From positions 1 to 64,000 of IMG/VR virus record IMGVR_UViG_3300023202_000247: DNA of 64,000 nucleotides. One strand, given 5' to 3'. Below, piece after piece: positions 1-58,556 of the stretch (the stretch's first letter is position 1; every line of letters begins with the position of its first letter). The notes beneath the pieces are model-generated. The model searched no databases. It saw only the letters and a program-made list of their open reading frames with translations, and was not told the DNA's origin. A program made the translations under genes and the position numbers.

Positions 1-630
1 AAATGTGCCGTATCCTTATTCTCTTATTTATTCTATCCAAATGTGCCGTATCCTTTAATTATGGTGGCCCCTTCTTTTATAAATGTGCCGTATCCTTATT
101 CTCTTATTTATTCTATCCAAATGTGTCGTATCCTTTAATTATGGTGGCCCCTTCTTTTATAAATGTGCCGTATCCTTATTCTCTTATTTATTCTATCCAA
201 ATGTGTCGTATCCTTTAATTATGGTGGCCCCTTCTTTTATAAATGTGCCGTATCCTTATTCTCTTATTTATTCTATCCAAATGTGTCGTATCCTTTAATT
301 ATGGTGGCCCCTTCTTTTATAAATGTGCCGTATCCTTATTCTCTTATTTATTCTATCCAAATGTGTCGTATCCTTTAATTATGGTGGCCCCTTCTTTTAT
401 AAATGTGCCGTATCCTTATTCTCTTATTTATTCTATCCAAATGTGTCGTATCCTTTAATTATGGTGGCCCCTTCTTTTATAAATGTGCCGTATCCTTATT
501 CTCTTATTTATTCTATCCAAATGTGCCGTATCCTTTAATTATGGTGGCCCCTTCTTTTATAAATGTGCCGTATCCTTATTCTCTTATTTATTCTATCCAA
601 ATGTGCCGTATCCTTTAATTATGGTGGCCC
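1..630. repeat. 80-bp tandem repeat, about 7.9 copies (cut by the window edge); each unit is a 38-bp plus a 42-bp subunit sharing the 17-bp core AAATGTGYCGTATCCTT
   Basis: Unit starts at 1, 81, 161 ... 561; second core at 39, 119 ... 599; only a C/T variant differs between copies. Confidence 0.98.
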
Positions 631-1075
631 CGCGGGTGCGCGCTGTCAACTCCCATACCCCCTTAGCTTTTCCACCTATCAACCCCTTCTGCGTTTCATC
701 GTGACACATTCTCCGAAACTGTTTCAACAATGAATCAAAAGAAAAACCAAAAACTAAAAAGCTTGCAGAAACTATTATTCTACTTTTCTTTTCCTTTTTC
801 GCAAAACATACACTTGGCATGCCAATTGCTACGCACGCTATGCGCGCAGGATAGGTAGGTTCTGACCCCATCTTAGACCGGTCGGCCGAATTAAAAAAAA
901 GATTGGAACCCTTAGGGTGCGGCCCCGTATTCAGTACAAGCCCGGCGAAAAACCGGGCCCCGGTTCTCTGAAAACCTAACGCATGTTCTGTCGCCGCACT
1001 TTCTAGGCTAGTCCCGGAAAGTTTCGCAGAAACCCGGAGTTACCGGCCTCTGCGGAAAAAAGTCAGCCTTACCGG

Positions 1076-26647: not shown

Positions 26648-27354
26648 GCGATAGAAACAAGCGTATCGTTGAATCGATGCAAGAGATGTTGTCCAACCAT
26701 GTGCTTATACGTGAGCATGTGTGGAATGATGACAAGCAGGCAAGCTGGGTGCTGGCTCGTGAGGGTCCGAGCGAACCCATCGAGGTAATTGCTGGCGTTG
26801 GAAATACCATCCTGATTCATGGCAACTGGCCGTTGATTCGGCTATGCTGTGAGGGTGGCAGCTGCTTCGAACGGCTCATGTGTGTAGCACATGCACGAGC
26901 CGATAAGCTCATGACGTATGCATCGTTGGGTGGTACCGAGTATGATGCTTACAATGCGAGCGAAGCAGCTGAAAAGCTCATGGAACTACGCGGTGATTAC
27001 AACGCTGATCATCAGTATGATCTTGGCAAGTTGATGGATGAAGCTATCAATCATGTTGAGATTGAAACGTCATTGTACGATTACCTACATCATAACAACT
27101 ACAGCTTCGAGCACGATACTTTTCGAGTAGTTCATGATAATCTGATTCAAGGTCAGGTAATCCTGAATCACTTGGTCAAGATATTGATTCGTCATCGTGA
27201 AGATGGTCCAGCTATTGAACATGCAGATGGATATAAATCTTGGTGGATAAATGGTACCAAACTGACAGAAGAAGAGTTTAACAATCGTTACTCATCTTGT
27301 ACCAGCAAGATTGTAGAGATTGACGGAAAACGTTACAAACTAGAAGAGGTTTGA
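26644..27354 (+). CDS. Chimeric protein: unrelated N-terminus fused to the HREDGPA-family C-terminus
   Basis: Switch at about 27190 (LIR|HREDGPA...KRYKLEEV). Confidence 0.8.
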   Translation: MSDRNKRIVESMQEMLSNHVLIREHVWNDDKQASWVLAREGPSEPIEVIAGVGNTILIHGNWPLIRLCCEGGSCFERLMCVAHARADKLMTYASLGGTEYDAYNASEAAEKLMELRGDYNADHQYDLGKLMDEAINHVEIETSLYDYLHHNNYSFEHDTFRVVHDNLIQGQVILNHLVKILIRHREDGPAIEHADGYKSWWINGTKLTEEEFNNRYSSCTSKIVEIDGKRYKLEEV

Positions 27355-27357
27355 AAA

Positions 27358-27864
27358 ATGGAAAAACTTCGAGTAGAGATTAATGATTGTGGTGACAAAA
27401 GGTATTACAAGTGGAATACGTATGAACTGCATAATCCATATGGTCCAGCAATTGAATTTGCATATGGATCTAAATCTTGGTATCTAAACGGTAAACTTCA
27501 TCGTGAAGATGGTCCAGCAATTGAATGGACAGATGGACATAAAGAGTGGTGGATAAACGGTAAAGTTCATCGTGAGGATGGTCCAGCAATTGAACATGTA
27601 GATGGAGCTAAAGAGTGGTGGATAAACGGTAAACGTCACCGAGAAGATGGCCCAGCTGTTGAATACGCAAATGGATCTAAATTTTGGTATGTAAACAGTA
27701 AACGTCATCGTGAAGATGGTCCAGCAATTGAATGGGCAGATGGACATAAAGAGTGGTATCTAAACGGTGTCGAATTGACAGAAAAAGAGTTCAACAATCG
27801 TCACTCTTGCGCTGGTAAAGTTGTAGAGATTGACGGAAAACGTTACAAGCTAGAAGAGGTTTGA
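27358..27864 (+). CDS. HREDGPA 23-aa-repeat protein, 5 units
   Basis: Conserved MEKLRVEI N-cap and VEIDGKRYKLEEV C-cap. Confidence 0.92.
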   Translation: MEKLRVEINDCGDKRYYKWNTYELHNPYGPAIEFAYGSKSWYLNGKLHREDGPAIEWTDGHKEWWINGKVHREDGPAIEHVDGAKEWWINGKRHREDGPAVEYANGSKFWYVNSKRHREDGPAIEWADGHKEWYLNGVELTEKEFNNRHSCAGKVVEIDGKRYKLEEV

Positions 27865-27867
27865 AAA

Positions 27868-28236
27868 ATGGAAAAGCTTCGAGTAGAGATTAAAGATTGT
27901 GGTACCAAGAGATACTACAAGTGGGATACGGATGAACTGCATAATCCGTATGGTCCAGCTGTTGAATATGCAGATGGAGATAAAGTTTGGTATCTAAACG
28001 GTAAACGTCATCGTGAAGATGGTCCAGCTGTTGAAGATGCAGATGGAGATAAATCTTGGTGGATAAACGGTAAACGTCACCGAGAAGATGGTCCAGCAAT
28101 TGAATATGCAGATGGAGATAAAGAATGGTGGGTAAACGGTGTCGAATTGACAGAAAAAGAGTTTCACAATCGTCACTCTTGTACCAGCAAGATTGTAGAG
28201 ATTGATGGAAAACGTTACAAACTAGAAGAGGTTTGA
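27868..28236 (+). CDS. HREDGPA repeat protein, 3 units
   Basis: Paralog of 27358. Confidence 0.92.
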   Translation: MEKLRVEIKDCGTKRYYKWDTDELHNPYGPAVEYADGDKVWYLNGKRHREDGPAVEDADGDKSWWINGKRHREDGPAIEYADGDKEWWVNGVELTEKEFHNRHSCTSKIVEIDGKRYKLEEV

Positions 28237-28239
28237 AAA

Positions 28240-28677
28240 ATGGAAAAACTTCGAGTAGAGATTGACCATCATGGTAACAATAGATACTACAAGTGGGATA
28301 CGGATGAACTGCATAATCCATATGGTCCAGCTGTTGAATATGCAGATGGAGATAAAGTTTGGTATCTAAACGGTAAACGTCATCGTGAAGCTGGTCCAGC
28401 TGTTGAATGGGAAGATGGAGATAAAGAGTGGTGGATAAATGGTAAACGTCACCGAGAAAATGGTCCAGCAATTGAACATGTAGATGGATCTAAATTTTGG
28501 TATATAAACAATAAACTTCATCGTGAAGATGGTCCAGCAATTGAATATGCAGATGGAGATAAAGAATGGTGGGTAAACGGTGTCGAATTGACAGAAAAAG
28601 AGTTTCACAATCGTCACTCTTATGCTGGCAAAGTTGTAGAGATTGACGGAAAACGTTACAAACTAGAAGAGGTTTGA
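28240..28677 (+). CDS. HREDGPA repeat protein, 4 units
   Basis: Paralog of 27358. Confidence 0.92.
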   Translation: MEKLRVEIDHHGNNRYYKWDTDELHNPYGPAVEYADGDKVWYLNGKRHREAGPAVEWEDGDKEWWINGKRHRENGPAIEHVDGSKFWYINNKLHREDGPAIEYADGDKEWWVNGVELTEKEFHNRHSYAGKVVEIDGKRYKLEEV

Positions 28678-28680
28678 AAT

Positions 28681-28980
28681 ATGGAAAAGCTTCGAGTAGA
28701 GATTAATGATTGTGGTGACAAGAGGTATTACAAGTGGGATACGGATGAGTATCATAATCCATATGGTCCTGCTATTGAACGTGCAAATGGAACTAAATGT
28801 TGGTATGTAAACGATAAGCGTCATCGTGAAGATGGCCCTGCTATTGAATTTGCAAATGGACATAAAGAGTGGTATCTAAACGGTGTCGAATTGACAGAAA
28901 AAGAGTTCAACAATCGTCACTATTGCGCTGGTAAAGTTGTAGAGATTGACGGAAAACGCTATAAACTAGAAGAGGTTTGA
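28681..28980 (+). CDS. HREDGPA repeat protein, 2 units
   Basis: Paralog of 27358. Confidence 0.92.
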   Translation: MEKLRVEINDCGDKRYYKWDTDEYHNPYGPAIERANGTKCWYVNDKRHREDGPAIEFANGHKEWYLNGVELTEKEFNNRHYCAGKVVEIDGKRYKLEEV

Positions 28981-32451: not shown

Positions 32452-32487
32452 GTAACAAAGAATGCTGTGCTCCTAAAAGTCACAGAC
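32452..32487 (+). CRISPR. Solitary CRISPR repeat, type B (GTAACAAAGAATGCTGTGCTCCTAAAAGTCACAGAC)
   Basis: 36 bp; aligns without gaps to the array repeat at 44040; stem CTGTG/CACAG. Confidence 0.85.
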
Positions 32488-34253: not shown

Positions 34254-34358
34254 TCTGAGTAGCTTGCAGGTTTTCATTTGATTACATTACCTGATAGTGT
34301 TTTTAACATGGGTAGTTATCATAAAAGGTAATTATGGTGGCAGCCCGCGCTCATAATT

Positions 34359-34392
34359 TTACAAGGATGCTGTGCTCCTAAAAGTCAAGAGC
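34359..34392 (+). CRISPR. Solitary type B repeat with a degenerate 3' end
   Basis: TTACAAGGATGCTGTGCTCCTAAAAGTCAAGAGC, 32 nt upstream of ORF 34425. Confidence 0.75.
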
Positions 34393-34424
34393 TGAACAAG
34401 AACGTATGGATGAAAGAGTAAACA

Positions 34425-34799
34425 ATGCATAAATTTCTCAAGGATATGGAGCAAAGTGGCGACCTACTCCTCTTTAAGCAAAAACAGATGCATCTAAATG
34501 AAGGTCCGACATTCTTTGGCAAGTCATTAACTGAGCGATGCTGTGGTACCAATTCATTTTTGACGGTGCGCTACTCATTCTTCACGTTAGAAATTCGTCA
34601 AGCTTATGACGTAGAAAACGTAAAGAAGAGTTTTACGCCTGTTAGGTGGGAATTGCGTTTCGAAGGTGGTCATGAAATCGACTGGGGTATGGCAGAGACC
34701 GTTGTAGATGCCATCGAAGATGCAGAGTCTGCGTTGCGAAAACGAGTAAAAGAATTCGTAGATATCGTTACGCTTTCTAAGAACGTTTCTAATGATTGA
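34425..34799 (+). CDS. Hypothetical protein, 124 aa
   Basis: ORF track; preceded by a type B repeat. Confidence 0.75.
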   Translation: MHKFLKDMEQSGDLLLFKQKQMHLNEGPTFFGKSLTERCCGTNSFLTVRYSFFTLEIRQAYDVENVKKSFTPVRWELRFEGGHEIDWGMAETVVDAIEDAESALRKRVKEFVDIVTLSKNVSND

Positions 34800-38573: not shown

Positions 38574-39359
38574 ATGGAAAAGTTACGAGTAGAGATTAAT
38601 TGTCGTGGTAACAAGATGTATTACAAGTGGGATACGGATGAACTGCATAATCCGTATGGTCCAGCTGTTGAATACGCAAATGGAACTAAATATTGGTATC
38701 TAAACGGTAAACATCACAGAGATGATGGCCCAGCTGTTGAATATGCAAATGGAGCTAAAGAGTGGTGGATAAACGATAAGCGTCATCGTGAGGATGGTCC
38801 AGCTGTTGAAGGTGCAAATGGACATAAAGAGTGGTATCTAAACAATAAACTTCATCGTGAAGATGGTCCAGCTGTTGAAGGTGCAAATGGACATAAAGAT
38901 TGGTATCTAAATAGTAAACGTCACCGAGAAGATGGTCCAGCTGTTGAATATGCAAATGGATATAAATCTTGGTGGATAAATGGTAAACGTCACCGAGAAG
39001 ATGGTCCAGCTATTGAATATGCAGATGGATATAAAGATTGGTATGTAAACGGCAAGCTTCATCGTGAAAATGGTCCAGCTGTTGAATTTGCAAATGGACA
39101 TAAAGAATGGTATCTAAACGGTAAACTTCATCGTAAAGATGGTCCAGCAATTGAAAATGCAAATGGACGTAAAGAGTGGTGGGTAAACGGAAAGCTTCAT
39201 CGTGAGGATGGTCCAGCTGTTGAATATGCAAATGGAGATAAATGTTGGTATGTAAATGGTACCAAACTGACAGAAGAAGAGTTCAACAGTCGTCACTCAT
39301 CTTGTACCAGCAAGATTGTTAAGATTGACGGAAAACGCTACAAGTTAGAAGAGATTTGA
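38574..39359 (+). CDS. HREDGPA repeat protein, 9 units
   Basis: Same caps and 23-aa period as array 1. Confidence 0.92.
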   Translation: MEKLRVEINCRGNKMYYKWDTDELHNPYGPAVEYANGTKYWYLNGKHHRDDGPAVEYANGAKEWWINDKRHREDGPAVEGANGHKEWYLNNKLHREDGPAVEGANGHKDWYLNSKRHREDGPAVEYANGYKSWWINGKRHREDGPAIEYADGYKDWYVNGKLHRENGPAVEFANGHKEWYLNGKLHRKDGPAIENANGRKEWWVNGKLHREDGPAVEYANGDKCWYVNGTKLTEEEFNSRHSSCTSKIVKIDGKRYKLEEI

Positions 39360-39802
39360 AAATGGAAAAGATAAGATTAGAGATTAATTGTCGTGGTGAC
39401 AAGAAGTATTACAAGTGGGATACGGATGAGTATCATAATCCATATGGTCCAGCTGTTGAATACGAAAATGGAGATAAATATTGGTATTTAAACGATAAGT
39501 GTCACCGAGAAGATGGTCCAGCTGTTGAACATGCAGATGGGCGTAAAGCTTGGTATCTAAACGGAAATCGTCACCGAGAAGATGGTCCAGCTGTTGAATA
39601 TACAAGTGGGGATAAAGAGTGGTGGGTAAATGGGGTACTTCACCGAGAAGATGGTCCGGCAATTGAAGGTGCAGATGGACGTAAATCTTGGTATGTAAAC
39701 GGTACCAAACTGACAAAAGAAGAATTCAACAGTCGTCACTCATCTTGTACCAGCAAGATTGTGGAGATTGACGGAAAACGTTACAAGCTAGAAGAAGTTT
39801 GA
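39356..39802 (+). CDS. HREDGPA repeat protein, 4 units
   Basis: Paralog. Confidence 0.92.
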   Translation: MKMEKIRLEINCRGDKKYYKWDTDEYHNPYGPAVEYENGDKYWYLNDKCHREDGPAVEHADGRKAWYLNGNRHREDGPAVEYTSGDKEWWVNGVLHREDGPAIEGADGRKSWYVNGTKLTKEEFNSRHSSCTSKIVEIDGKRYKLEEV

Positions 39803-40314
39803 GCATGGAAAAGCTAAGATTAGAGATTGACTGTGATGGTACAAAAAAGTATTACAAGTGGGATATGGATGAACTGCATAATCCATATGGTCCAGCTGTT
39901 GAATACGAAAATGGAGATAAATATTGGTATCTAAACGATAAGCTTCACCGAGAAGATGGTCCAGCTGTTGAACATGCAGATGGAAATAAATCTTGGTATC
40001 TAAACGGTAAACTTCATCGTGAGGGTGGTCCAGCTGTTGAAAATGCAAATGGAGATAAAGAGTGGTGGGTAAACGTAAAGCTTCATCGTGAGGATGGTCC
40101 AGCAGTTGAACATGTAGATGGATCTAAATTTTGGTATGTAAACAACAAGCTTCACCGAGATGATGGTCCAGCTGTTGAATATGCAAATGGAACTAAATGT
40201 TGGTATGTAAACGGTACCAAACTGACAAAAGAAGAATTCAACAGTCGTCACTCATCTTGTACCAGCAAGATTGTGGAGATTGACGGAAAACGTTACAAGC
40301 TAGAAGAGATTTGA
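39799..40314 (+). CDS. HREDGPA repeat protein, 5 units
   Basis: Paralog. Confidence 0.92.
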   Translation: MSMEKLRLEIDCDGTKKYYKWDMDELHNPYGPAVEYENGDKYWYLNDKLHREDGPAVEHADGNKSWYLNGKLHREGGPAVENANGDKEWWVNVKLHREDGPAVEHVDGSKFWYVNNKLHRDDGPAVEYANGTKCWYVNGTKLTKEEFNSRHSSCTSKIVEIDGKRYKLEEI

Positions 40315-40685
40315 AAATGGAAAAGCTAAGATTAGAGATTAATTGTCGTGGTGACAAGAAGTATTACAAGTGGGATACGTGTGAACTGCATAATCCATAT
40401 GGTCCAGCAATTGAATTTGCTGGAGATAAATATTGGTATCTAAACGATAAGTGTCATCGAAAAGATGGTCCAGCAATTGAATTTGTAAATGGAACCAAAT
40501 CTTGGTGGATAAACAATAAACTTCATCGGGAAGATGGTCCAGCAATTGAATGGGCAAATGGATCTAAATATTGGTATGTAAACGGTGTCGAATTGACAGA
40601 GGCAGAGTTCAACAATCGTCACTCATCTTGTGCTGGTAAAGTTGTAGAAATTGACGGAAAACGTTACAAACTAGAAGAGATTTGA
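40311..40685 (+). CDS. HREDGPA repeat protein, 3 units
   Basis: Paralog. Confidence 0.92.
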   Translation: MKMEKLRLEINCRGDKKYYKWDTCELHNPYGPAIEFAGDKYWYLNDKCHRKDGPAIEFVNGTKSWWINNKLHREDGPAIEWANGSKYWYVNGVELTEAEFNNRHSSCAGKVVEIDGKRYKLEEI

Positions 40686-41254
40686 AAATGGAAAAGCTAA
40701 GATTAGAGATTAACCATCATGGTGACAAGAGGTATTACAAGTGGGATACGGATGAACTGCATAATCCGTATGGTCCATCTGTTGAATACAAAAATGGATC
40801 TAAATATTGGTATGTAAACGGCAAGCTTCATCGTGAAAATGGTCCAGCTATTGAATTTGCAAGTGGGCGTAAAGATTGGTATGTAAACGGCAAGCTTCAT
40901 CGTGAAAATAGTCCAGCTATTGAATTTGCAAATGGACATAAAGAATGGTATGTAAACGGTAAACTTCATCGTGAAGATGGTCCAGCACCGGCTGACTCAA
41001 TCACGAGCTGGAACATTCGGGAAGATGATGGTTCGAATCCATCACGGCCGGTCATGCACAAATTGCATAAATTGTTAATATCATTGTGGTTTTTGATGCT
41101 CGTACTCATATGTGTGGGTGACCATGTGTATGAGTATCACGAGTGTAAAAGTATCGAGCAGCGTAGTAAGTTCTCCGTGATAAACGGATGTGAAGTAAAT
41201 GTGGGTGGAACGTGGGTTCCACGGCAAGCGTGGGGTGGTGATAAAAATGAATGA
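40682..41254 (+). CDS. Chimeric ORF: HREDGPA N-terminal part read through into a 66-aa membrane-protein ORF (ATG 41054)
   Basis: Repeat breaks at GPA|PADS (about 40987); MHKLHKLLISLWFL... follows. Confidence 0.7.
   Translation: MKMEKLRLEINHHGDKRYYKWDTDELHNPYGPSVEYKNGSKYWYVNGKLHRENGPAIEFASGRKDWYVNGKLHRENSPAIEFANGHKEWYVNGKLHREDGPAPADSITSWNIREDDGSNPSRPVMHKLHKLLISLWFLMLVLICVGDHVYEYHECKSIEQRSKFSVINGCEVNVGGTWVPRQAWGGDKNE
40986..41054 (+). tRNA. Degenerate tRNA-like element (not a functional tRNA call)
   Basis: GATGG-TTCGAAT-CCATC T-arm, ACCGGC/GCCGGT acceptor-like stem, CTC-AATCAC-GAG D-arm-like; no credible anticodon arm or CCA. Confidence 0.35.
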
Positions 41255-41370: not shown

Positions 41371-41916
41371 ATGCATACGGACAAGATTGTTGATTATATC
41401 AACAGCCGTTTGATAAGTATTCAAAAGAAGTACAACTTTCCTCCGAACGTCAAGTTGCGTGACGTTCCAGATAATAAAGATGCAATAAAACATTATCATC
41501 AATTCAAAGAATTGGTGAGGTTAATTGAAAAAACGAATCTCGACGTTGATATTCCGTATGACGAGAGTGGTGAGTCGCCCACAGAAAAGTTTGTGAAGCT
41601 CACTCAACGTGATGTATTCGTTTACTTCTGCCAAGAAGGCTTCTCCACAACTTGGAAGATTGGATACTCAACCCAATCATTTCGAAGAATAAAAGCAGTG
41701 CAGACTGGCAATCCGAACGATTTGCACTTGCGCTATGAGGTGCCTGGTTCCTTTGACCTAGAGCAAAGCCTTCATAGGTATCTGAAGAACTTTAGAATCA
41801 AGGGTCGGTCGAAGGAGTGGTTCGACCTTGACCCTGCAATGGTTGAGAACATTGTTAAACGCCTGAAAAATGGCGAAGATTTTTATACACAAAAGGCTTT
41901 GAAAAATGAAACGTAA
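41371..41916 (+). CDS. GIY-YIG (T5orf172/MUG113-like) domain protein
   Basis: VYFCQEG...WKIGYS...IKAVQTGNP...LEQSLHRYL...EWF. Confidence 0.85.
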   Translation: MHTDKIVDYINSRLISIQKKYNFPPNVKLRDVPDNKDAIKHYHQFKELVRLIEKTNLDVDIPYDESGESPTEKFVKLTQRDVFVYFCQEGFSTTWKIGYSTQSFRRIKAVQTGNPNDLHLRYEVPGSFDLEQSLHRYLKNFRIKGRSKEWFDLDPAMVENIVKRLKNGEDFYTQKALKNET

Positions 41917-43921
41917 GACTTCATCGTTGCCTACGCGAATTTACACATATGGCATCGTAAGTATGGATACAGATAGTCATAGCATCATCATGGAGCAGTT
42001 GTTCGAAGGCAACAAAGTTCGTAATCAACTTGTTGCTCTCGAGCGTGAGCGACGCGCAAAGTTTCGCACGCTTCGCTCCGAGGTTGCTCCGCAGCTCGCT
42101 GTTCTCGAGATGGAAAAAGACGGTATCGTATCCCTATACGATGATGCACTTGTCCAGTTGAAGAAGCTCAAGCGTACTGAGCGTGATGGTTCGGCAGAGC
42201 TTGATGTTTTGAATGGTGTGAAAAAGAAACTAGCCATAGTCAAAGAACGTCTGAAGAAGATGCGGCAAGAGGTTGATGACGAGCACTTCAAGCCTGGTAA
42301 AATCGCTTTCAAGAAAGAGTACAAGAAAAGGGTTGAAGATTACAAGGCTCAAGATGAAAACGGTAACTGCGGGCCACATATCCAAGCACGTATCAAAAAA
42401 GAATTGCGTGAAGAGTTTCGTGCCGATTGCAAGTACTCTAGTTGGTTGAAGAGTGACGAGATTCAGGAGTGGTTCGAGTCAGAGTTCAAGCGCATCAAGA
42501 ATGAGAGTCCTTGTTACCCTGGTACCAAGGCTGCTGTATCTGATGCAGCTATGAAGTCATTTAGTGACTCTATGGTTGATCCAGCATTCAAACCTTTTGA
42601 TGGTGGTCGAGTCGAGCGTCAGCTGTTAGAGGCGGTAAAAGGAAAGTATATTGCTGCCATTCCAGAACGAATCATGTCTGGAGAGCTACGTAACATTTGC
42701 ATCACGCCGGTAATGCCAAAACTCAGCAATGGTGGAGAATATCAGGCAAAAATCAGATTGGCCAATGATGTTTACGTAACTGTAAACTTCATCATGCATC
42801 GACCATTGCCTCAAGACTCGTCCGCAAAGTTTGTTCGCGTTCTCGCAAAACGAGTTGGAAATCATTTCAAGTTCGAGTTACAATTTGTAATCGAGTTTGA
42901 TTTGCCCGATCGTCAAACTACTGATAGCTTGATTGCTCTCGACATTGGTTGGCGAGTGCTAGATGATGGTAGTTTCTTGGTTGCTACGTCATGGGATGGT
43001 AAAGAAACGAAACAGTTGAAGTTGCCATCCGAACTTGCAAGTATCAACGCACGATGTGTAGAGCTTCTTGGTTATGCTGATAAGCATCTTGATAATATCA
43101 AGGTGTTTGCTGGTGAACACAAGGAAGACATTGCCAAGGTAATTGGTGATCGTATGGATCTTTCACACATTCACAAGTGGCGCTCGTCAAAAAAGATGCG
43201 CAAACTAACAAACATCTTTGTGCAAGATGTACTTGATGAGCGTGTCCATGAACTATGGAGGTCTTGGAAAAAGCATCGTGGGTTCAACAAAACTAAGGGT
43301 CAAACTTGGTCTCAGTGGAGGGCTTTGCGAAAGACACCACCAAAGGATCTGTATGATAAGCCAGACATCATCTTTGCGTGGGCATCTAGCCTTGATTTGA
43401 GTAATGATGAGTGCATTGCTGTGTGTTTGGAATGGTGGCGTCGTAAGGATATTCACCTGACTGACTATGCACGGAATACTCAGCATCGTTTGTTCTTGCG
43501 TCGTCGCGAAATCTTCCGAGTTTTTGCAAGTCAGATTGCTAAAAAGTATGATACTTTGGTAATTGCAAAGCTCAATCGCTCCAAGCTAGCAGAAAAGCCC
43601 AAGGCGGATAAGGACCGACGTACCAAGCATGACGAGAACACAAATAGTGTGCGTCAGTTTGTTGGGCCTTCCATTCTAGTACAAGCATGTAAGGAAGCGT
43701 TCCGAGGCTCCGTTGTGGAGCTTTCTGGCGTGAAGAATCTTCATCACAACTGTGGAGGCAAGCCTAAGACTGAACACAAGATTCAAAATGTCTTGTGTGG
43801 TAAGTGTGAAAAAATGTTTAACCATGATTTGAATTACGCAAAGGTATTGTATCATCGCGGTAGCGAGCGGTCCGGTGGTGCCGCAGGTACCGGCAGCGCT
43901 CGTAAAAGTGCAAGTGCGTGA
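41906..43921 (+). CDS. cas12m: Type V CRISPR effector, Cas12m (V-M, formerly V-U1)-like, probably DNase-inactive
   Basis: RIYTYG N-terminus, MHRPLP, RuvC-I LDIGWR, RuvC-II position LVIAKLN without an acidic residue, CGKC zinc ribbon, RuvC-III HDLNYA; immediately followed by leader and repeats. Confidence 0.8.
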   Translation: MKRKTSSLPTRIYTYGIVSMDTDSHSIIMEQLFEGNKVRNQLVALERERRAKFRTLRSEVAPQLAVLEMEKDGIVSLYDDALVQLKKLKRTERDGSAELDVLNGVKKKLAIVKERLKKMRQEVDDEHFKPGKIAFKKEYKKRVEDYKAQDENGNCGPHIQARIKKELREEFRADCKYSSWLKSDEIQEWFESEFKRIKNESPCYPGTKAAVSDAAMKSFSDSMVDPAFKPFDGGRVERQLLEAVKGKYIAAIPERIMSGELRNICITPVMPKLSNGGEYQAKIRLANDVYVTVNFIMHRPLPQDSSAKFVRVLAKRVGNHFKFELQFVIEFDLPDRQTTDSLIALDIGWRVLDDGSFLVATSWDGKETKQLKLPSELASINARCVELLGYADKHLDNIKVFAGEHKEDIAKVIGDRMDLSHIHKWRSSKKMRKLTNIFVQDVLDERVHELWRSWKKHRGFNKTKGQTWSQWRALRKTPPKDLYDKPDIIFAWASSLDLSNDECIAVCLEWWRRKDIHLTDYARNTQHRLFLRRREIFRVFASQIAKKYDTLVIAKLNRSKLAEKPKADKDRRTKHDENTNSVRQFVGPSILVQACKEAFRGSVVELSGVKNLHHNCGGKPKTEHKIQNVLCGKCEKMFNHDLNYAKVLYHRGSERSGGAAGTGSARKSASA

Positions 43922-44039
43922 TTTCATTGCTAAAGATGTAGAATGAGAAAATAATTTTGCAAGTTGTTATAATAATAATTTGCAACCTCTTGCAAAACAA
44001 CCCGTAACCATTTGAAATCATTGATGATTTCAAATGGGG
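43899..44039 (+). promoter_or_regulatory. CRISPR leader copy 1 with an extended -10 promoter (TGTTATAAT, 43965-43973) and a 14-bp palindrome
   Basis: CCATTTGAAATCAT-TG-ATGATTTCAAATGG directly before repeat 1; duplicated at 44526-44686. Confidence 0.8.
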
Positions 44040-44183
44040 GTAACAAAGGATGCTACGCTCCTTAAAGTTGTAGACGATTGGTTGGGAGTGGAGTCGCTAC
44101 GTCGAGCCAGGTAACAAAGGATGCTACGCTCCTTAAAGTCACAGACAAACTCAAAGAATGCTGTGCTCCTAAAAGTCACAGAC
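44040..44183 (+). CRISPR. Mini-array 1: type A repeat, 35-nt spacer, A/B hybrid repeat (44111-44146), type B repeat (44148-44183)
   Basis: Direct inspection. Confidence 0.9.
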
Positions 44184-44213
44184 AAAAGAATAACGAAACG
44201 GAAAGAGTAAAGA

Positions 44214-44519
44214 ATGAAGAAGAGTAACGAAACGAATTTTTCATCAGCATATTTCCACATTTACAATGGTGGAATGTCAATTTCTATCGTCAAAATATCT
44301 GAAGGTGATACCTTAGAATTTAGATTGAGAATTGCAAACTCAATTTTCGGAGCAGCGTTTAGTCATGAATTTCCGTTGCCTCCACCAAAGGGGTTGCGTT
44401 GGATTGCAAAATCCTTTGAAAGTTTGGCTGATTATATAGAGAAAGAATCAGCCAATGGTCATAACAGTATTTCTCCATTTGAGACCATCCAGATAAATGG
44501 TAGCGAATCTAAGCTTTAA
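44214..44519 (+). CDS. Hypothetical protein, 101 aa, embedded in the CRISPR locus
   Basis: ATG 30 nt after a type B repeat; stop just before leader copy 2. Confidence 0.7.
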   Translation: MKKSNETNFSSAYFHIYNGGMSISIVKISEGDTLEFRLRIANSIFGAAFSHEFPLPPPKGLRWIAKSFESLADYIEKESANGHNSISPFETIQINGSESKL

Positions 44520-44525
44520 AGGACT

Positions 44526-44686
44526 CTCGCAAAAGTGCAAGTGCGTGATTTCATTGCAATCGGAGACAGCATGCCCCTAAAGATGTAGACTGAAAAAATA
44601 ATTTTGCAAGTTGTTATAATAATAATCTGCAACCACTCGCAAAACAACCCGTAACCATTTGAAATCATTGATGATTTCAAATGGGG
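44526..44686 (+). promoter_or_regulatory. CRISPR leader copy 2
   Basis: Near-identical to leader 1 with a 20-nt insertion; TGTTATAAT at 44612-44620. Confidence 0.8.
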
Positions 44687-45377
44687 GTAACAAAGGATGC
44701 TACGCTCCTTAAAGTTGTAGACGACGATAGCCGCTGCAGTGTGCACTGAATACGCAAGTAACAAAGGATGCTACGCTCCTTAAAGTTGTAGACAAATCGC
44801 CCGGCCAGACAGGGAGCTGGCGAAGTTGGTCGAGCCGGTGTAACAAAGGATGCTACCCTCCTTAAAGTTGTAGACTATTCTTACAATGTGCATCTGAGCA
44901 TTATTTACAAGTAACAAAGGATGCTACGCTCCTTAAAGTTGTAGATTAGGACTGATTGTGGTGAAGCAGAAAGAAGGTAACAAAGGATGCTACGCTCCTT
45001 AAAGTTGTAGACTAGACAGCTCGCCGAGCGATCCGAAGTTGGTCGAGCCGGTGTAACAAAGGATGCTACCCTCCTTAAAGTTGTAGACTATTCTTACAAT
45101 GTGCATCTGAGCATTATTTACAAGTAACAAAGGATGCTACGCTCCTTAAAGTTGTAGATTAGGACTGATTGTGGTGAAGCAGAAAGAAGGTAACAAAGGA
45201 TGCTACGCTCCTTAAAGTTGTAGACTAGACCGCGGCACCGCGTGTGACGCTCCTCATGTAATAAAGGATGCTACGCTCCTTAAAGTTGTAGACAGGGGAC
45301 GAGCCGTGAGCGGCTCGTAATAAAGGATGTAGACAGCCACAGCCATAGCCAATGGATGCCACGCTCCTTAAAGTTGT
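44687..45377 (+). CRISPR. Main array, repeat GTAACAAAGGATGCTACGCTCCTTAAAGTTGTAGAC
   Basis: Full repeats at 44687, 44758, 44840, 44911, 44977, 45053, 45124, 45190, 45258; degenerate repeats at 45317 and about 45354; spacers 23-46 nt. Confidence 0.97.
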
Positions 45378-45566
45378 TGTAAAAATGTACCTGGGGTGCG
45401 CCTATATAAAGTAACAGTAATAAAATGTCACCAAAACCATGGACCATTGAAGGTATAATAATTTCTGCAAGGAATGATTTGGCTTTAGGTAAGACACCAA
45501 GTGGTGGGCCACTTACAATCATAGCCGCAAGCATACTTGCCAAACAATATAGTCCACGAAAGCAAG

Positions 45567-57492: not shown

Positions 57493-57792
57493 ATGCTTCC
57501 GGACGAACAAAGACTGCTAGATTTCTTCAACAACAAGTCAAAACCATTCGACCCAGCGTCTGATGGGCCGACCATTGGTCATCCAAATGGATACAATCCG
57601 AAAGATATTTGTCTAGCATCTGATCAATGGTTGGAGGAGTCTCACGATTAGTGGGCCTTTCCTTTGCCGGAAAGGTCGACGTTTAACCCGTCGGCTCCGG
57701 TTCTCACCGAGACTTGCGTTGCTTTGATCAACCGCAATTCGCTTTACAGCATGTTTGATCGGATGATGCAGTTTTACTTTCGGAACACTTAG
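57493..57792 (+). pseudogene. OGFr-N-like (opioid growth factor receptor conserved region) pseudogene
   Basis: DQWLEESHD*WAFPLPERSTFNPSAPVLT resembles WLE..HDYIQWLFPL.E.S.FNP.APVLT; in-frame TAG at 57649. Confidence 0.6.
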
Positions 57793-57882
57793 GTCACAGA
57801 CAAGTATCGTAGTTAGATGGAGCCTCAGTGGTAACGCAGAACGTGAGACGAGGCTGTCACTGCATTTGATCTACGAAGAATT

Positions 57883-57992
57883 TTTACAAAGGATGCTGTG
57901 CTCCTAAAAGTCACAGACGGCTTGACGCCGCCAGAATTCGTGATTAGCATGATGTTTCATCACAAAGGATGCTGTGCTCCTAAGTCACAGAC
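57883..57992 (+). CRISPR. Mini-array of two type B repeats (57883-57918, about 57958-57992) around a spacer of about 40 nt
   Basis: Direct inspection; the second repeat has a 2-nt deletion in the loop; a further 3'-end remnant GTCACAGAC lies at 57793-57801. Confidence 0.85.
57922..57950 (+). promoter_or_regulatory. sigma70-type promoter occupying the mini-array spacer
   Basis: TTGACG, exactly 17 bp, TAGCAT; predicted start site about 57957, at the 5' end of the second repeat. Confidence 0.65.
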
Positions 57993-58049: not shown

Positions 58050-58556
58050 ATGAGTAACCAAACCAAGCAAGCCTACACTTCGCATGACGCCGCCAAGATC
58101 CTGGGTGTGAGCAATAGCTCCGTGCTCAAGTGGATTGACGACGAAAAGCTCGCAGCCTACCGTACCCCTGGTGGTCACCGGCGCATCAAGCCCGAGGATC
58201 TTCGTGCGTTCGCTGCCGAGTATGAGATGCCGTTTGCTGCCGGCGACGCTGGCGAGGGCAAGGTATTCTTCCTGGGCAAGCGTCTGCCCAAGAGCCTGAA
58301 GGATTACGACACCCAGAAGTTCTCGCCGAGTGACATGGTCAAAACGATCGTGGCCATCGCTTCCGAGAAGCCTGCGGTTGTCGTGCAGGCCGAGGGTGAC
58401 AATGCCGAGAGCGTACTCGAGGCAATTCAGGAGAGCAGTGCGGGTTCCCGCTACGTTCTCGTGGCCGAGGAGAACGAGGAGAACGCGGCCCTGCTCAAGA
58501 GCGTGAAGAAGCTCGGCGGCGAGGTTGTGGCCTCTCTGAAGGATCTCGAGCTGTAA
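58050..58556 (+). CDS. Excisionase-type HTH (HTH_17/MerR-like) regulator with a degenerate receiver-like C-terminus
   Basis: YTSHDAAKILGVSNSSVLKWID...AYRTPGGHRRI. Confidence 0.85.
   Translation: MSNQTKQAYTSHDAAKILGVSNSSVLKWIDDEKLAAYRTPGGHRRIKPEDLRAFAAEYEMPFAAGDAGEGKVFFLGKRLPKSLKDYDTQKFSPSDMVKTIVAIASEKPAVVVQAEGDNAESVLEAIQESSAGSRYVLVAEENEENAALLKSVKKLGGEVVASLKDLEL

What the first reader, a model, noticed from the sequence alone, without database searches (positions are those of the whole stretch)
43899..44686. Duplicated leader brackets a protein-coding gene inside the CRISPR locus, with an A/B hybrid repeat at the junction
Seen: about 140-160 bp comprising the last codons of cas12m and the leader occur twice (43899 and 44526). 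Between them are one spacer, a chimeric repeat (A 5' half with B 3' half, stem broken), a B repeat and a 101-aa ORF. Each leader also has a repeat-like end (TAAAGATGTAGA) just after the cas stop, an extended -10 and a 14-bp palindrome. Inference: A-by-B recombination inserted a B-headed gene cassette, so the CRISPR promoter now drives a cargo gene. This is direct evidence that B repeats can move genes.
Basis: partly seen in the sequence, partly recalled or inferred. Interest (0 to 1): 0.65.

Follow-up and report, generated by a model that had tools for sequence, protein, structure and literature searches.

The report
Gene spliced into phage CRISPR array
In a 321-kb phage, recombination between two versions of the CRISPR repeat has put a small real protein gene, plus a second copy of the CRISPR promoter region, inside the Cas12m CRISPR locus, and the same variant repeat also sits just upstream of about ten other phage genes.

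Summary
The same layout occurs in four JGI assemblies, and every junction is covered by contigs from four runs of another study. The order is: cas12m tail, leader 1, A repeat, spacer, A/B chimera, B repeat, ORF101, cas12m tail, leader 2, main array.

The chimera-to-B junction is identical to the inside of the spacer-less B-B doublets that flank another gene at 108 kb. An A-by-B crossover is therefore well supported. The right junction falls on a repeat-like stretch in the last codons of cas12m.

ORF101 is a genuine gene (dN/dS 0.11). It is predicted to be a PUR-alpha-like dimer. Its relatives elsewhere are not linked to CRISPR.

B repeats (about 17 copies, all on the + strand) lie mostly 11-78 nt upstream of start codons. 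They keep exactly the part of the repeat that a mature Cas12m crRNA retains. An unrelated Cas12m huge phage has the same repeat-headed gene layout.

I therefore read B repeats mainly as Cas12m-handle RNA elements in 5' UTRs. Their recombination is a by-product that occasionally reshuffles genes.

"The CRISPR promoter drives the cargo" is plausible but untested. "Direct evidence that B repeats move genes" is overstated.

The parts
41906..43921 (+). cas12m-like effector gene (671 aa, P0001)
   Evidence: PADLOC Cas12u1 E 1.8e-47. PDB Cas12m 23vw E 1.2e-24. It is the only copy in the 321-kb record.
43896..43914 (+). Repeat-like stretch in the last codons of cas12m; the left edge of the duplicated unit
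   Evidence: 14 of 19 positions match B-repeat positions 16-34. Only one other non-repeat site in the genome (109186) matches this well on either strand.
43899..44039 (+). Copy 1 of the duplicated unit: cas12m tail, truncated pseudo-repeat end (43931-43942) and leader 1. Leader 1 has an extended -10 (43965-43973) and a 30-nt palindrome (44008-44037).
   Evidence: The leader RNA fold has z -4.7, driven by the palindrome hairpin.
44040..44075 (+). A-type CRISPR repeat R1 (intact)
44076..44110 (+). Spacer S1 (35 nt, 60% GC against 40.6% for the genome); no target found
44111..44146 (+). Chimeric repeat: A positions 1-29 joined to B positions 30-36. Stem I is reduced to 3 of 5 pairs.
   Evidence: It is also present in the independent contigs spanning 44048-44139.
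44148..44183 (+). B-type repeat, the second unit of a former B-B doublet
44184..44213 (+). 5' UTR with a purine-rich ribosome-binding site
   Evidence: Direct reading. A similar RBS stretch occurs at 34412-34427.
44214..44519 (+). ORF101 (P0002): a real gene, predicted to be a PUR-alpha-like beta-beta-beta-beta-alpha homodimer
   Evidence: dN/dS 0.11 against P0019. Family of 18 proteins. AF2 pLDDT 84.9. Pur-alpha 3n8b Z 6.4, rmsd 2.5 over 70 residues. Foldseek probability 0.91, E 0.13. Dimer ipSAE 0.69 against a best control of 0.00.
44526..44686 (+). Copy 2 of the duplicated unit: cas12m tail (44526-44557), full-length degenerate pseudo-repeat (about 44556-44590) and leader 2. Leader 2 has a -10 at 44612-44620 and a palindrome at 44655-44684.
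44687..45381 (+). Main A-type array: 10 repeats plus a degenerate terminal repeat. It contains a 213-bp internal duplication and the self-matching spacer at 44876-44910 and 45089-45123.
32452..32487 (+). Solitary B repeat
34357..34392 (+). Degenerate B repeat, 32 nt upstream of the ATG at 34425
57785..57992 (+). B mini-array: partial B end, an 81-nt filler, B, a 40-nt 'spacer' and a B unit with a 2-nt deletion. It lies 57 nt upstream of the HTH gene at 58050.

Best explanation
The locus is a phage-borne type V-M (Cas12m) CRISPR locus whose leader-proximal end was rebuilt by ectopic recombination between CRISPR repeats of two sequence types.

Shown:
- The phage carries an A-type array next to cas12m. 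It also carries about 17 dispersed B-type copies.
- B differs from A by three compensatory changes in the 5-bp stem.
- All B copies are on the + strand. Most lie 11-78 nt upstream of a start codon. Some are spacer-less B-B doublets that flank a gene on both sides.

Inferred history:
- An A repeat of the array crossed over with the first unit of a B-B doublet heading ORF101. This produced the chimera.
- The far end of the cassette was joined to a repeat-like stretch in the last codons of cas12m, on a second genome copy or a co-infecting variant.
- That join re-created a second cas12m tail, pseudo-repeat, leader and first repeat.

Inferred function:
- Leader 1 transcribes R1, S1, the chimera, B and ORF101. 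It probably reads on into leader 2 and the main array.
- Cas12m processes its own pre-crRNA upstream of the repeat scaffold. It would cut at R1 and at B, and probably not at the broken chimera.
- This would release an S1 crRNA and an ORF101 mRNA that carries a Cas12m handle at its 5' end.
- Genome-wide, B units would act as Cas12m-recognised 5'-UTR elements for mRNA processing and/or Cas12m-dependent control of the ribosome-binding site.
- Their similarity to array repeats makes them occasional recombination substrates that reshuffle genes.
For: Structure and reality of the locus.

Cas12m identity.

Left junction: the chimera-to-B junction is identical to the internal junction of the B-B doublets.

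Right junction: the edge of the duplication coincides with a 14/19 match to the B repeat, which is rare in the genome.

Age of the duplication: each leader copy has its own derived changes relative to the 82% relative L015. The duplication is therefore not brand new, or it joined two variants.

B inventory: all copies are on the + strand, intergenic and upstream of ATGs.

Conservation pattern: B copies differ in their first 4-5 nt but share an identical 31-nt remainder. In Cas12m2 the first 7 nt of the 36-nt repeat part are disordered, and cleavage is upstream of the scaffold (PMC10442227; PMC11013384).

Stem support: the A and B stems differ by 3 two-sided compensatory changes, and the L015 relative carries a third variant of the 5' half of the stem, its 3' half lying beyond the contig end.

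Independent example: the huge-phage contig L042 has a Cas12m-like gene (23% identity), an array, and a solitary repeat 22 nt upstream of an ATG with an AGGAG in between.

Transcription: no + strand terminator is predicted between leader 1 and ORF101.

ORF101: it is under purifying selection.
Against: - No RNA data exist for this phage. Transcription from leader 1, processing at B and any effect on translation are all untested.
- The record holds one cas12m, but it is only 75% complete. B could belong to another effector.
- The right-junction model rests on a short, imperfect similarity.
- The 5' halves of two B copies carry a G10-to-A change that weakens the second predicted stem.
- B-headed genes share no homology or common function.
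- The L042 parallel is a single solitary repeat in 22 kb. A related fragment, G001, shows none.
Confidence: 0.55

Rival explanations
1. B units are RNA decoys (Racr-like solitary repeat units). They would be aimed at the Cas12m of a host or a rival phage whose repeats have the B stem. The small genes behind them, ORF101 included, would be anti-defence cargo. On this reading the A/B chimera is an incidental recombination scar.
For: - Racrs are repeat mimics encoded as solitary units in viral genomes, often next to acr genes (PMC10651486).
- Spacer-less B-B doublets would yield repeat-only RNA.
- Related phages carry different stem variants in their arrays, as expected if orthogonality is under selection.
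- Several B-headed genes are small ORFans, and one is an HTH protein.
Against: - No array with B repeats turned up in 185,579 species genomes or in the viral and metagenome collections.
- B units sit in 5' UTRs rather than behind promoters of their own.
- A large RtcB ligase gene is also B-headed.
- In L042 the solitary unit is nearly identical to the phage's own array repeat.
Confidence: 0.2
2. There was no repeat-mediated gene capture. The leader and first repeat were duplicated by ordinary tandem duplication or replication slippage. ORF101 arrived by illegitimate recombination. The chimera arose by gene conversion or point changes.
For: - The right junction has only weak similarity to a repeat.
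- The main array itself shows slippage-type events: a 213-bp duplication and fused spacers.
- Another Cas12m locus (L050) also has a second, 75% similar copy of its 'cas tail plus downstream' segment ahead of an array.
Against: - The three B-state bases of the chimera are contiguous.
- They are followed by the exact linker and 5' end of a doublet-type B unit.
- Independent point changes would not produce that pattern.
Confidence: 0.12
3. The layout is an assembly artefact or a chimera of two strains.
For: - The region is repeat-rich.
- Short-read contigs break at the repeats.
- One JGI contig ends just after ORF101.
Against: - Four assemblies give an identical layout.
- Contigs from a second study cover every junction, including the copy-specific variants.
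- Depth is equal over cas12m and ORF101.
Confidence: 0.02
4. This is a dedicated integron-like cassette system. B repeats would be recombination sites used by a site-specific recombinase. The CRISPR leader would play the part of the common promoter.
For: - One gene (108243-108704) is flanked by B-B doublets on both sides.
- ORF101 now lies behind a strong-looking promoter.
- B-flanked 126-nt elements are duplicated at 57.8 and 72.6 kb.
Against: - No integron-type or other tyrosine recombinase matches the integron integrase profile in the record. No Cas1 is present either.
- B sites do not vary between strains.
- The ORF101 homologue in L014 is not B-headed.
Confidence: 0.04

Closest known systems
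Type V-M (Cas12m, formerly V-U1) CRISPR-Cas, including copies carried by mobile elements and huge phages
   Same: - The effector is homologous to Cas12m profiles and structures.
- A 36-nt repeat array lies adjacent to the gene.
- The repeat has two predicted stems compatible with a stem-plus-pseudoknot scaffold.
- There is no adaptation module.
   Different: - The locus has two leaders with a protein gene between them.
- A second repeat type is scattered through the genome.
- One array spacer matches the phage's own genome perfectly.
Solitary repeat units and mini-arrays in viral genomes; RNA anti-CRISPRs (Racr; PMC10651486)
   Same: Single repeat-like units and one-spacer mini-arrays lie outside the array in a virus genome.
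   Different: - There are about 17 copies.
- They are variants of the phage's own cas-adjacent repeat.
- They lie in the 5' UTRs of genes rather than behind their own promoters.
- Some are spacer-less doublets that bracket a gene.
- No host array with this repeat was found.
CRISPR repeat-like regulatory RNAs in cas loci (CreTA, crlRNA, tracr-L, V-A solitary repeat units; bioRxiv 10.1101/2023.03.03.530964)
   Same: Degenerate or stand-alone repeats lie next to a cas gene. Here this is the pseudo-repeat immediately after the cas12m stop.
   Different: No partially matching target for any sequence downstream of a repeat was found in the genome. Most units here are also far from the cas gene.
Integron gene cassettes
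   Same: Structured repeats flank promoterless genes, and one upstream promoter could drive them.
   Different: - There is no integrase.
- There is no evidence of site-specific exchange.
- The repeat is a CRISPR repeat that very likely works as RNA.
PUR-alpha / PC4 / Whirly-type nucleic-acid-binding proteins (for ORF101)
   Same: ORF101 is predicted to have the beta-beta-beta-beta-alpha repeat. It is predicted to form a helix-swapped homodimer.
   Different: - No sequence-level match to Pfam PurA or DUF3276.
- The fold scores are middling.
- Nucleic-acid binding is untested.

Membership tests
Type V-M CRISPR-Cas (Cas12m) | Effector homologous to Cas12m/V-U1, with a TnpB-like C-terminal RuvC and zinc-ribbon region | tested here: met
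   PADLOC Cas12u1 E 1.8e-47. PDB Cas12m 23vw E 1.2e-24, plus 8hhl Cas12m2. Homologues carry PF07282.
Type V-M CRISPR-Cas (Cas12m) | Adjacent CRISPR array of about 36-nt repeats with a structured 3' part | tested here: met
   Array at 44687-45381 plus the unit at 44040-44146. The stem is supported by 3 compensatory pairs between A and B. Spacers are mostly 54-68% GC against 40.6% for the genome.
Type V-M CRISPR-Cas (Cas12m) | PAM-dependent DNA binding without cleavage; self-processing of pre-crRNA | not testable with these tools
   These are known for characterised orthologues (PMC11013384, PMC10442227). They are not measurable here.
Viral solitary repeat units / Racr | Repeat mimic outside an array in a virus genome | tested here: met
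Viral solitary repeat units / Racr | Mimics the repeat of a host (or rival) CRISPR-Cas system | tested here: inconclusive
   No B-type array was found in the genome, viral or metagenome collections. Absence from these collections does not prove absence.
Viral solitary repeat units / Racr | [quoted passage not shown] | tested here: inconclusive
   Consensus scans show no consistent promoter ahead of B units. No RNA data are available.
Integron | IntI-type tyrosine recombinase | tested here: not met
   TIGR02249 gives no match at E 0.01 in the 321-kb record, while the search rings in all 14 control genomes. The record is 75% complete.
Integron | Cassettes bounded by recombination sites and exchanged between contexts | tested here: inconclusive
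   One gene is flanked by B-B doublets. ORF101 lies in a different context in L014, but without a B head. No strain polymorphism was seen.
Regulatory cr-like RNAs (CreTA / crlRNA) | The pseudo-spacer partially matches a promoter target in the same genome | tested here: not met
   The 40 nt after each repeat unit have no second match in the genome, apart from duplicated elements.
PUR-alpha-like proteins (ORF101) | PUR repeat fold (four strands plus a helix) that pairs into a PUR domain | tested here: met
   The model has pLDDT 84.9. The top hits in three searches are Pur-alpha. The scores are middling: Z 6.4, Foldseek E 0.13. The predicted homodimer scores 0.69 against a best control of 0.00, agrees on at least 97% of contacts between runs and has pLDDT of at least 82. 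That mark was reached by 20 of 30 solved pairs and 1 of 23 single chains.
PUR-alpha-like proteins (ORF101) | Sequence membership in Pfam PurA/DUF3276 | tested here: not met
   No Pfam domain is on record for any of the 18 family members. There is no PDB sequence match.

The most novel reading that the evidence does not exclude
Cas12m-bearing huge phages use copies of their CRISPR repeat as 5'-UTR modules. Cas12m would cut and stay bound to these handles, and so process and control ordinary phage mRNAs. Because genes are then framed by repeats like spacers, repeat-by-repeat recombination can move whole genes into and out of the CRISPR array transcript. This would be a natural case of a Cas effector used for mRNA processing, and of genes occupying the spacer position.
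Probability: 0.25. Interest if true: 0.85.

Novelty: new variant of a known kind. Interest (0 to 1): 0.62.

Why it matters
Solitary CRISPR repeats in viruses are known, but their roles are mostly guessed at. Here one phage offers a cas12m gene, its array, a compensatory-variant repeat placed in front of about ten genes, and a recombinant that physically joins the two repeat types with a real gene between two CRISPR leaders.

This makes three questions testable with a small construct:
- Does a DNA-binding-only Cas12m also process and regulate mRNAs?
- Do stem variants give orthogonality or decoy function?
- Do CRISPR repeats act as recombination modules for gene shuffling in huge phages?

A second, unrelated Cas12m phage with a repeat-headed gene hints that this may be general.

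Tried and rejected
Collection searches that found nothing useful:
- Megablast of the locus against GenBank phages gave no match.
- The Cas12m peptide scan of viral contigs gave nothing.
- Exact A and B repeat searches in viral contigs gave nothing.
- The B repeat was absent from metagenome contigs. A degenerate A/B pattern hit only one unrelated gut-bacterial gene, 12 times.
- The B repeat was absent from 185,579 species genomes.
- The spacer S1 protospacer was absent from genome and viral collections.

ORF101 annotation:
- It has no PADLOC, PHROG or PDB sequence match.
- The first AF2 model, built from 2 sequences, was too poor to use (pLDDT 46).
- Its relatives P0025 and P0031 sit in ordinary operons with no CRISPR context. 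I therefore did not test or claim binding between Cas12m and ORF101.

Ideas tested and dropped:
- 'Sequence after B acts as a guide against the phage's own genome': no second matches.
- 'B units sit behind their own promoters': consensus scans show nothing consistent.
- 'B sites vary between strains': they are identical in all the contigs I could fetch.

Limits of the tools:
- The record behind L042 could not be searched as a whole.
- No RNA run holds the locus.
Full report
**Setting**

The window is the first 64 kb of a 321,461-bp IMG/VR virus record (CheckV completeness 75%). The ORF at 41906-43921 encodes a 671-aa protein. It matches the PADLOC Cas12u1 model at E 1.8e-47 and solved Cas12m structures at E 1.2e-24. 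It is the only such gene in the record. No Cas1 is present.

**The observation**

The repeat finder reports two duplicated blocks: 43899-43930 with 44526-44557 (32 nt, 97%) and 43930-44077 with 44577-44724 (148 nt, 97%). Copy 2 has 20 extra bases between the blocks. BLAST against the whole genome finds no further copy of the leader and no paralogue of ORF101.

The array repeat (type A, 36 nt) and a second type (B) differ at seven positions. Three of the changed pairs turn the stem CTACG/TGTAG into CTGTG/CACAG, so both sides change together.

The unit at 44111-44146 has the A state at positions 16, 17 and 24, and the B state at positions 30-32. This leaves two mismatches in the 5-bp stem. One base later comes a B unit, then 30 nt with a purine-rich ribosome-binding site, then ORF101 at 44214-44519.

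- TAAAGATGTAGA
- the extended -10 TGTTATAAT
- a 14+14 palindrome, which dominates the predicted leader RNA fold (z -4.7)

**Not an artefact**

The same order, with the same spacer S1, is found in four JGI assemblies from different samples. They differ from the window by only 0-3 base changes across 43.2-44.7 kb.

Contigs from four sequencing runs of a different study cover each junction separately:
- 43000-43977
- 43948-44068
- 44048-44139
- 44154-44624
- 44595-44722

In run X1 the depth is equal over cas12m (247) and ORF101 (235). No contig joins leader 1 directly to the main array. These are all one near-clonal population. They prove the structure but not its evolutionary age.

**How the structure arose**

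B units occur elsewhere as spacer-less doublets with a 37-nt period. Doublets at 108136/108173 and 108716/108753 bracket a 153-aa gene. The junction inside those doublets is the same string as the junction between the chimera and the B unit in the finding. The chimera is therefore most simply the first unit of a B-B doublet that crossed over with an A repeat, within the five shared bases between positions 24 and 30.

At the other end, homology to cas12m starts at 44526. The corresponding place in cas12m (43896-43914) matches B positions 16-34 at 14 of 19 bases. Only one other non-repeat site in the genome reaches that level. I infer that the second crossover also used a repeat-like sequence.

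A cassette joined on its left to the second array repeat, and on its right to the cas12m tail of another genome copy, would duplicate exactly the interval observed: tail, pseudo-repeat, leader and first repeat.

Compared with the 82%-identical relative L015, each leader copy has its own derived substitutions. Either the event is not very recent or it joined two variants. This would also explain why S1 is present only in the first unit.

The pseudo-repeat just after the cas12m stop is full length in copy 2 (about 44556-44590) and truncated in copy 1. It resembles the arrangement in other Cas12m loci, where the first repeat starts 8-60 nt after the stop.

**ORF101**

A homologue with 83% amino-acid identity lies on a Logan contig (L014), in a different gene context and without a B unit in front of it. 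DNA homology is limited to 44203-44521. That contig does end in the first bases of a doublet-type B unit.

dN/dS between the two genes is 0.11, so ORF101 is a functional gene.

A profile search gathered 18 small proteins that share an AYFHI-NGG motif, many of them on contigs of 100-450 kb. With that alignment, AlphaFold gives pLDDT 84.9 and a four-strand-plus-helix fold.

Borrelia Pur-alpha is the best hit both in the all-against-representatives search (Z 6.4, rmsd 2.5 over 70 of 74 residues) and in Foldseek (probability 0.91, E 0.13). The ESM Atlas model's neighbours are DUF3276/PurA clusters at TM about 0.5. These scores are middling.

A homodimer prediction passes its controls:
- score 0.69 against a best control of 0.00
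- at least 97% of contacts agree between runs
- partner pLDDT of at least 82
- the pass mark was reached by 20 of 30 solved pairs and 1 of 23 single chains

The predicted interface is a helix-to-helix and helix-to-sheet contact of the PUR type. The model supports pairing but does not prove it.

Relatives of ORF101 elsewhere are not next to CRISPR elements.

**What the B units are**

Hamming, 9-mer and nhmmer scans find B-type or degenerate copies at these positions:
- 32452
- 34357
- 44148
- 57793 (partial)
- 57883
- 57959
- 72132
- 72287
- 72559 (partial)
- 72649
- 108136, 108173, 108716 and 108753
- 117033
- 171961

There is also an A-like variant at 116986. All are on the + strand and all lie in the first 172 kb.

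Start codons follow at 11, 13, 28, 30, 32, 34, 57 and 78 nt. The genes behind them are unrelated to one another. They include an HTH protein, an intein-containing RtcB ligase and several ORFans.

The copies differ in their first 4-5 bases but share an identical 31-nt remainder. That is the part a mature Cas12m crRNA keeps. In Cas12m2, cleavage is upstream of the scaffold, and nucleotides -36 to -30 are disordered.

A distant Cas12m-like locus on a 496-kb contig (L042) shows the same design. It has an eight-repeat array right after the cas gene. Four kb further on there is a solitary copy, again with the first ~7 nt of the repeat not conserved. That copy is followed by AGGAG and an ATG 22 nt later.

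I therefore favour an RNA-level role as Cas12m handles in 5' UTRs. The decoy (Racr-like) reading is the main rival. Recombination between units would be a side effect.

**Limits**

- There is no RNA evidence.
- No close relatives have complete loci.
- The host is unknown.
- The PAM is unknown.
- A quarter of the genome may be missing.

Noticed in passing
window 44876-44910 and 45089-45123; target at G000 260161-260195 (L034:6862-6896), minus strand: One array spacer (29% GC) matches the phage's own genome 35/35. The match lies inside a + strand 682-aa ORF (258306-260354), about 175 nt before an endonuclease VII/HNH-like gene. The flank on the spacer strand reads ..TTTTATC. All other spacers are GC-rich and have no self match. 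With a binding-only Cas12m, this could be self-regulation.
   Followed up: partly
window 44821-45233; L011 and L012 arrays: The main array is polymorphic between samples. The window has a 213-bp internal duplication that L011 lacks. L012 carries eight more spacers, and the window shows a fused spacer in their place. The leader-proximal spacer is the same in all samples, so change occurs by internal recombination, not by acquisition at the leader end.
   Followed up: partly
window 57793-57918 and G000 72559-72684 (L030:760-885): Two 126-nt B-flanked elements are identical except for a central 34-nt segment. That segment is inverted between them (57845-57878 against 72611-72644, 2 mismatches).
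   Followed up: partly
window 57919-57958: The 40-nt 'spacer' of the B mini-array contains a sigma-70-like TTGACG-17-TAGCAT match. It points at the HTH gene at 58050.
   Followed up: no
L042:10001-12436 and L042:16530-16587: An unrelated 496-kb phage contig has a Cas12m-like gene and an array that starts 8 nt after the stop. It also has a solitary repeat 22 nt upstream of a gene start.
   Followed up: partly
L050:8662-8734 and L050:11768-11840: In another Cas12m-like locus, a 73-nt segment spanning the cas stop codon is 75% similar to a segment just upstream of the array that precedes the cas gene. This is a second case of a duplicated 'cas tail plus leader'.
   Followed up: partly
G000 116986-119549 (L032): An A-like variant repeat, 11 nt, a B repeat and a hairpin precede an 800-aa RtcB RNA ligase with a LAGLIDADG/intein-like insert. 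RtcB seals RNA ends that carry a 3'-phosphate or 2',3'-cyclic phosphate and a 5'-OH (background knowledge).
   Followed up: no
window 27190-28884 and 38656-41030: There are two clusters of genes built from 69-nt (23-aa) tandem repeats of MORN-like type. Gene boundaries differ between strain assemblies.
   Followed up: no
window 1-631: An 80-bp tandem repeat (7.9 copies, 99% identical) lies at the very start of the record. It is possibly a genome-end or packaging-related repeat.
   Followed up: no
window 45318-45335 and L012:4575-4593: Internally deleted repeat remnants lie inside 'spacers' of the main array. These are further signs of slippage between repeats.
   Followed up: no
window 41371-41916: A T5orf172/MUG113 (GIY-YIG-like) gene overlaps the start of cas12m. 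It is conserved next to cas12m in the 82% relative L015.
   Followed up: no
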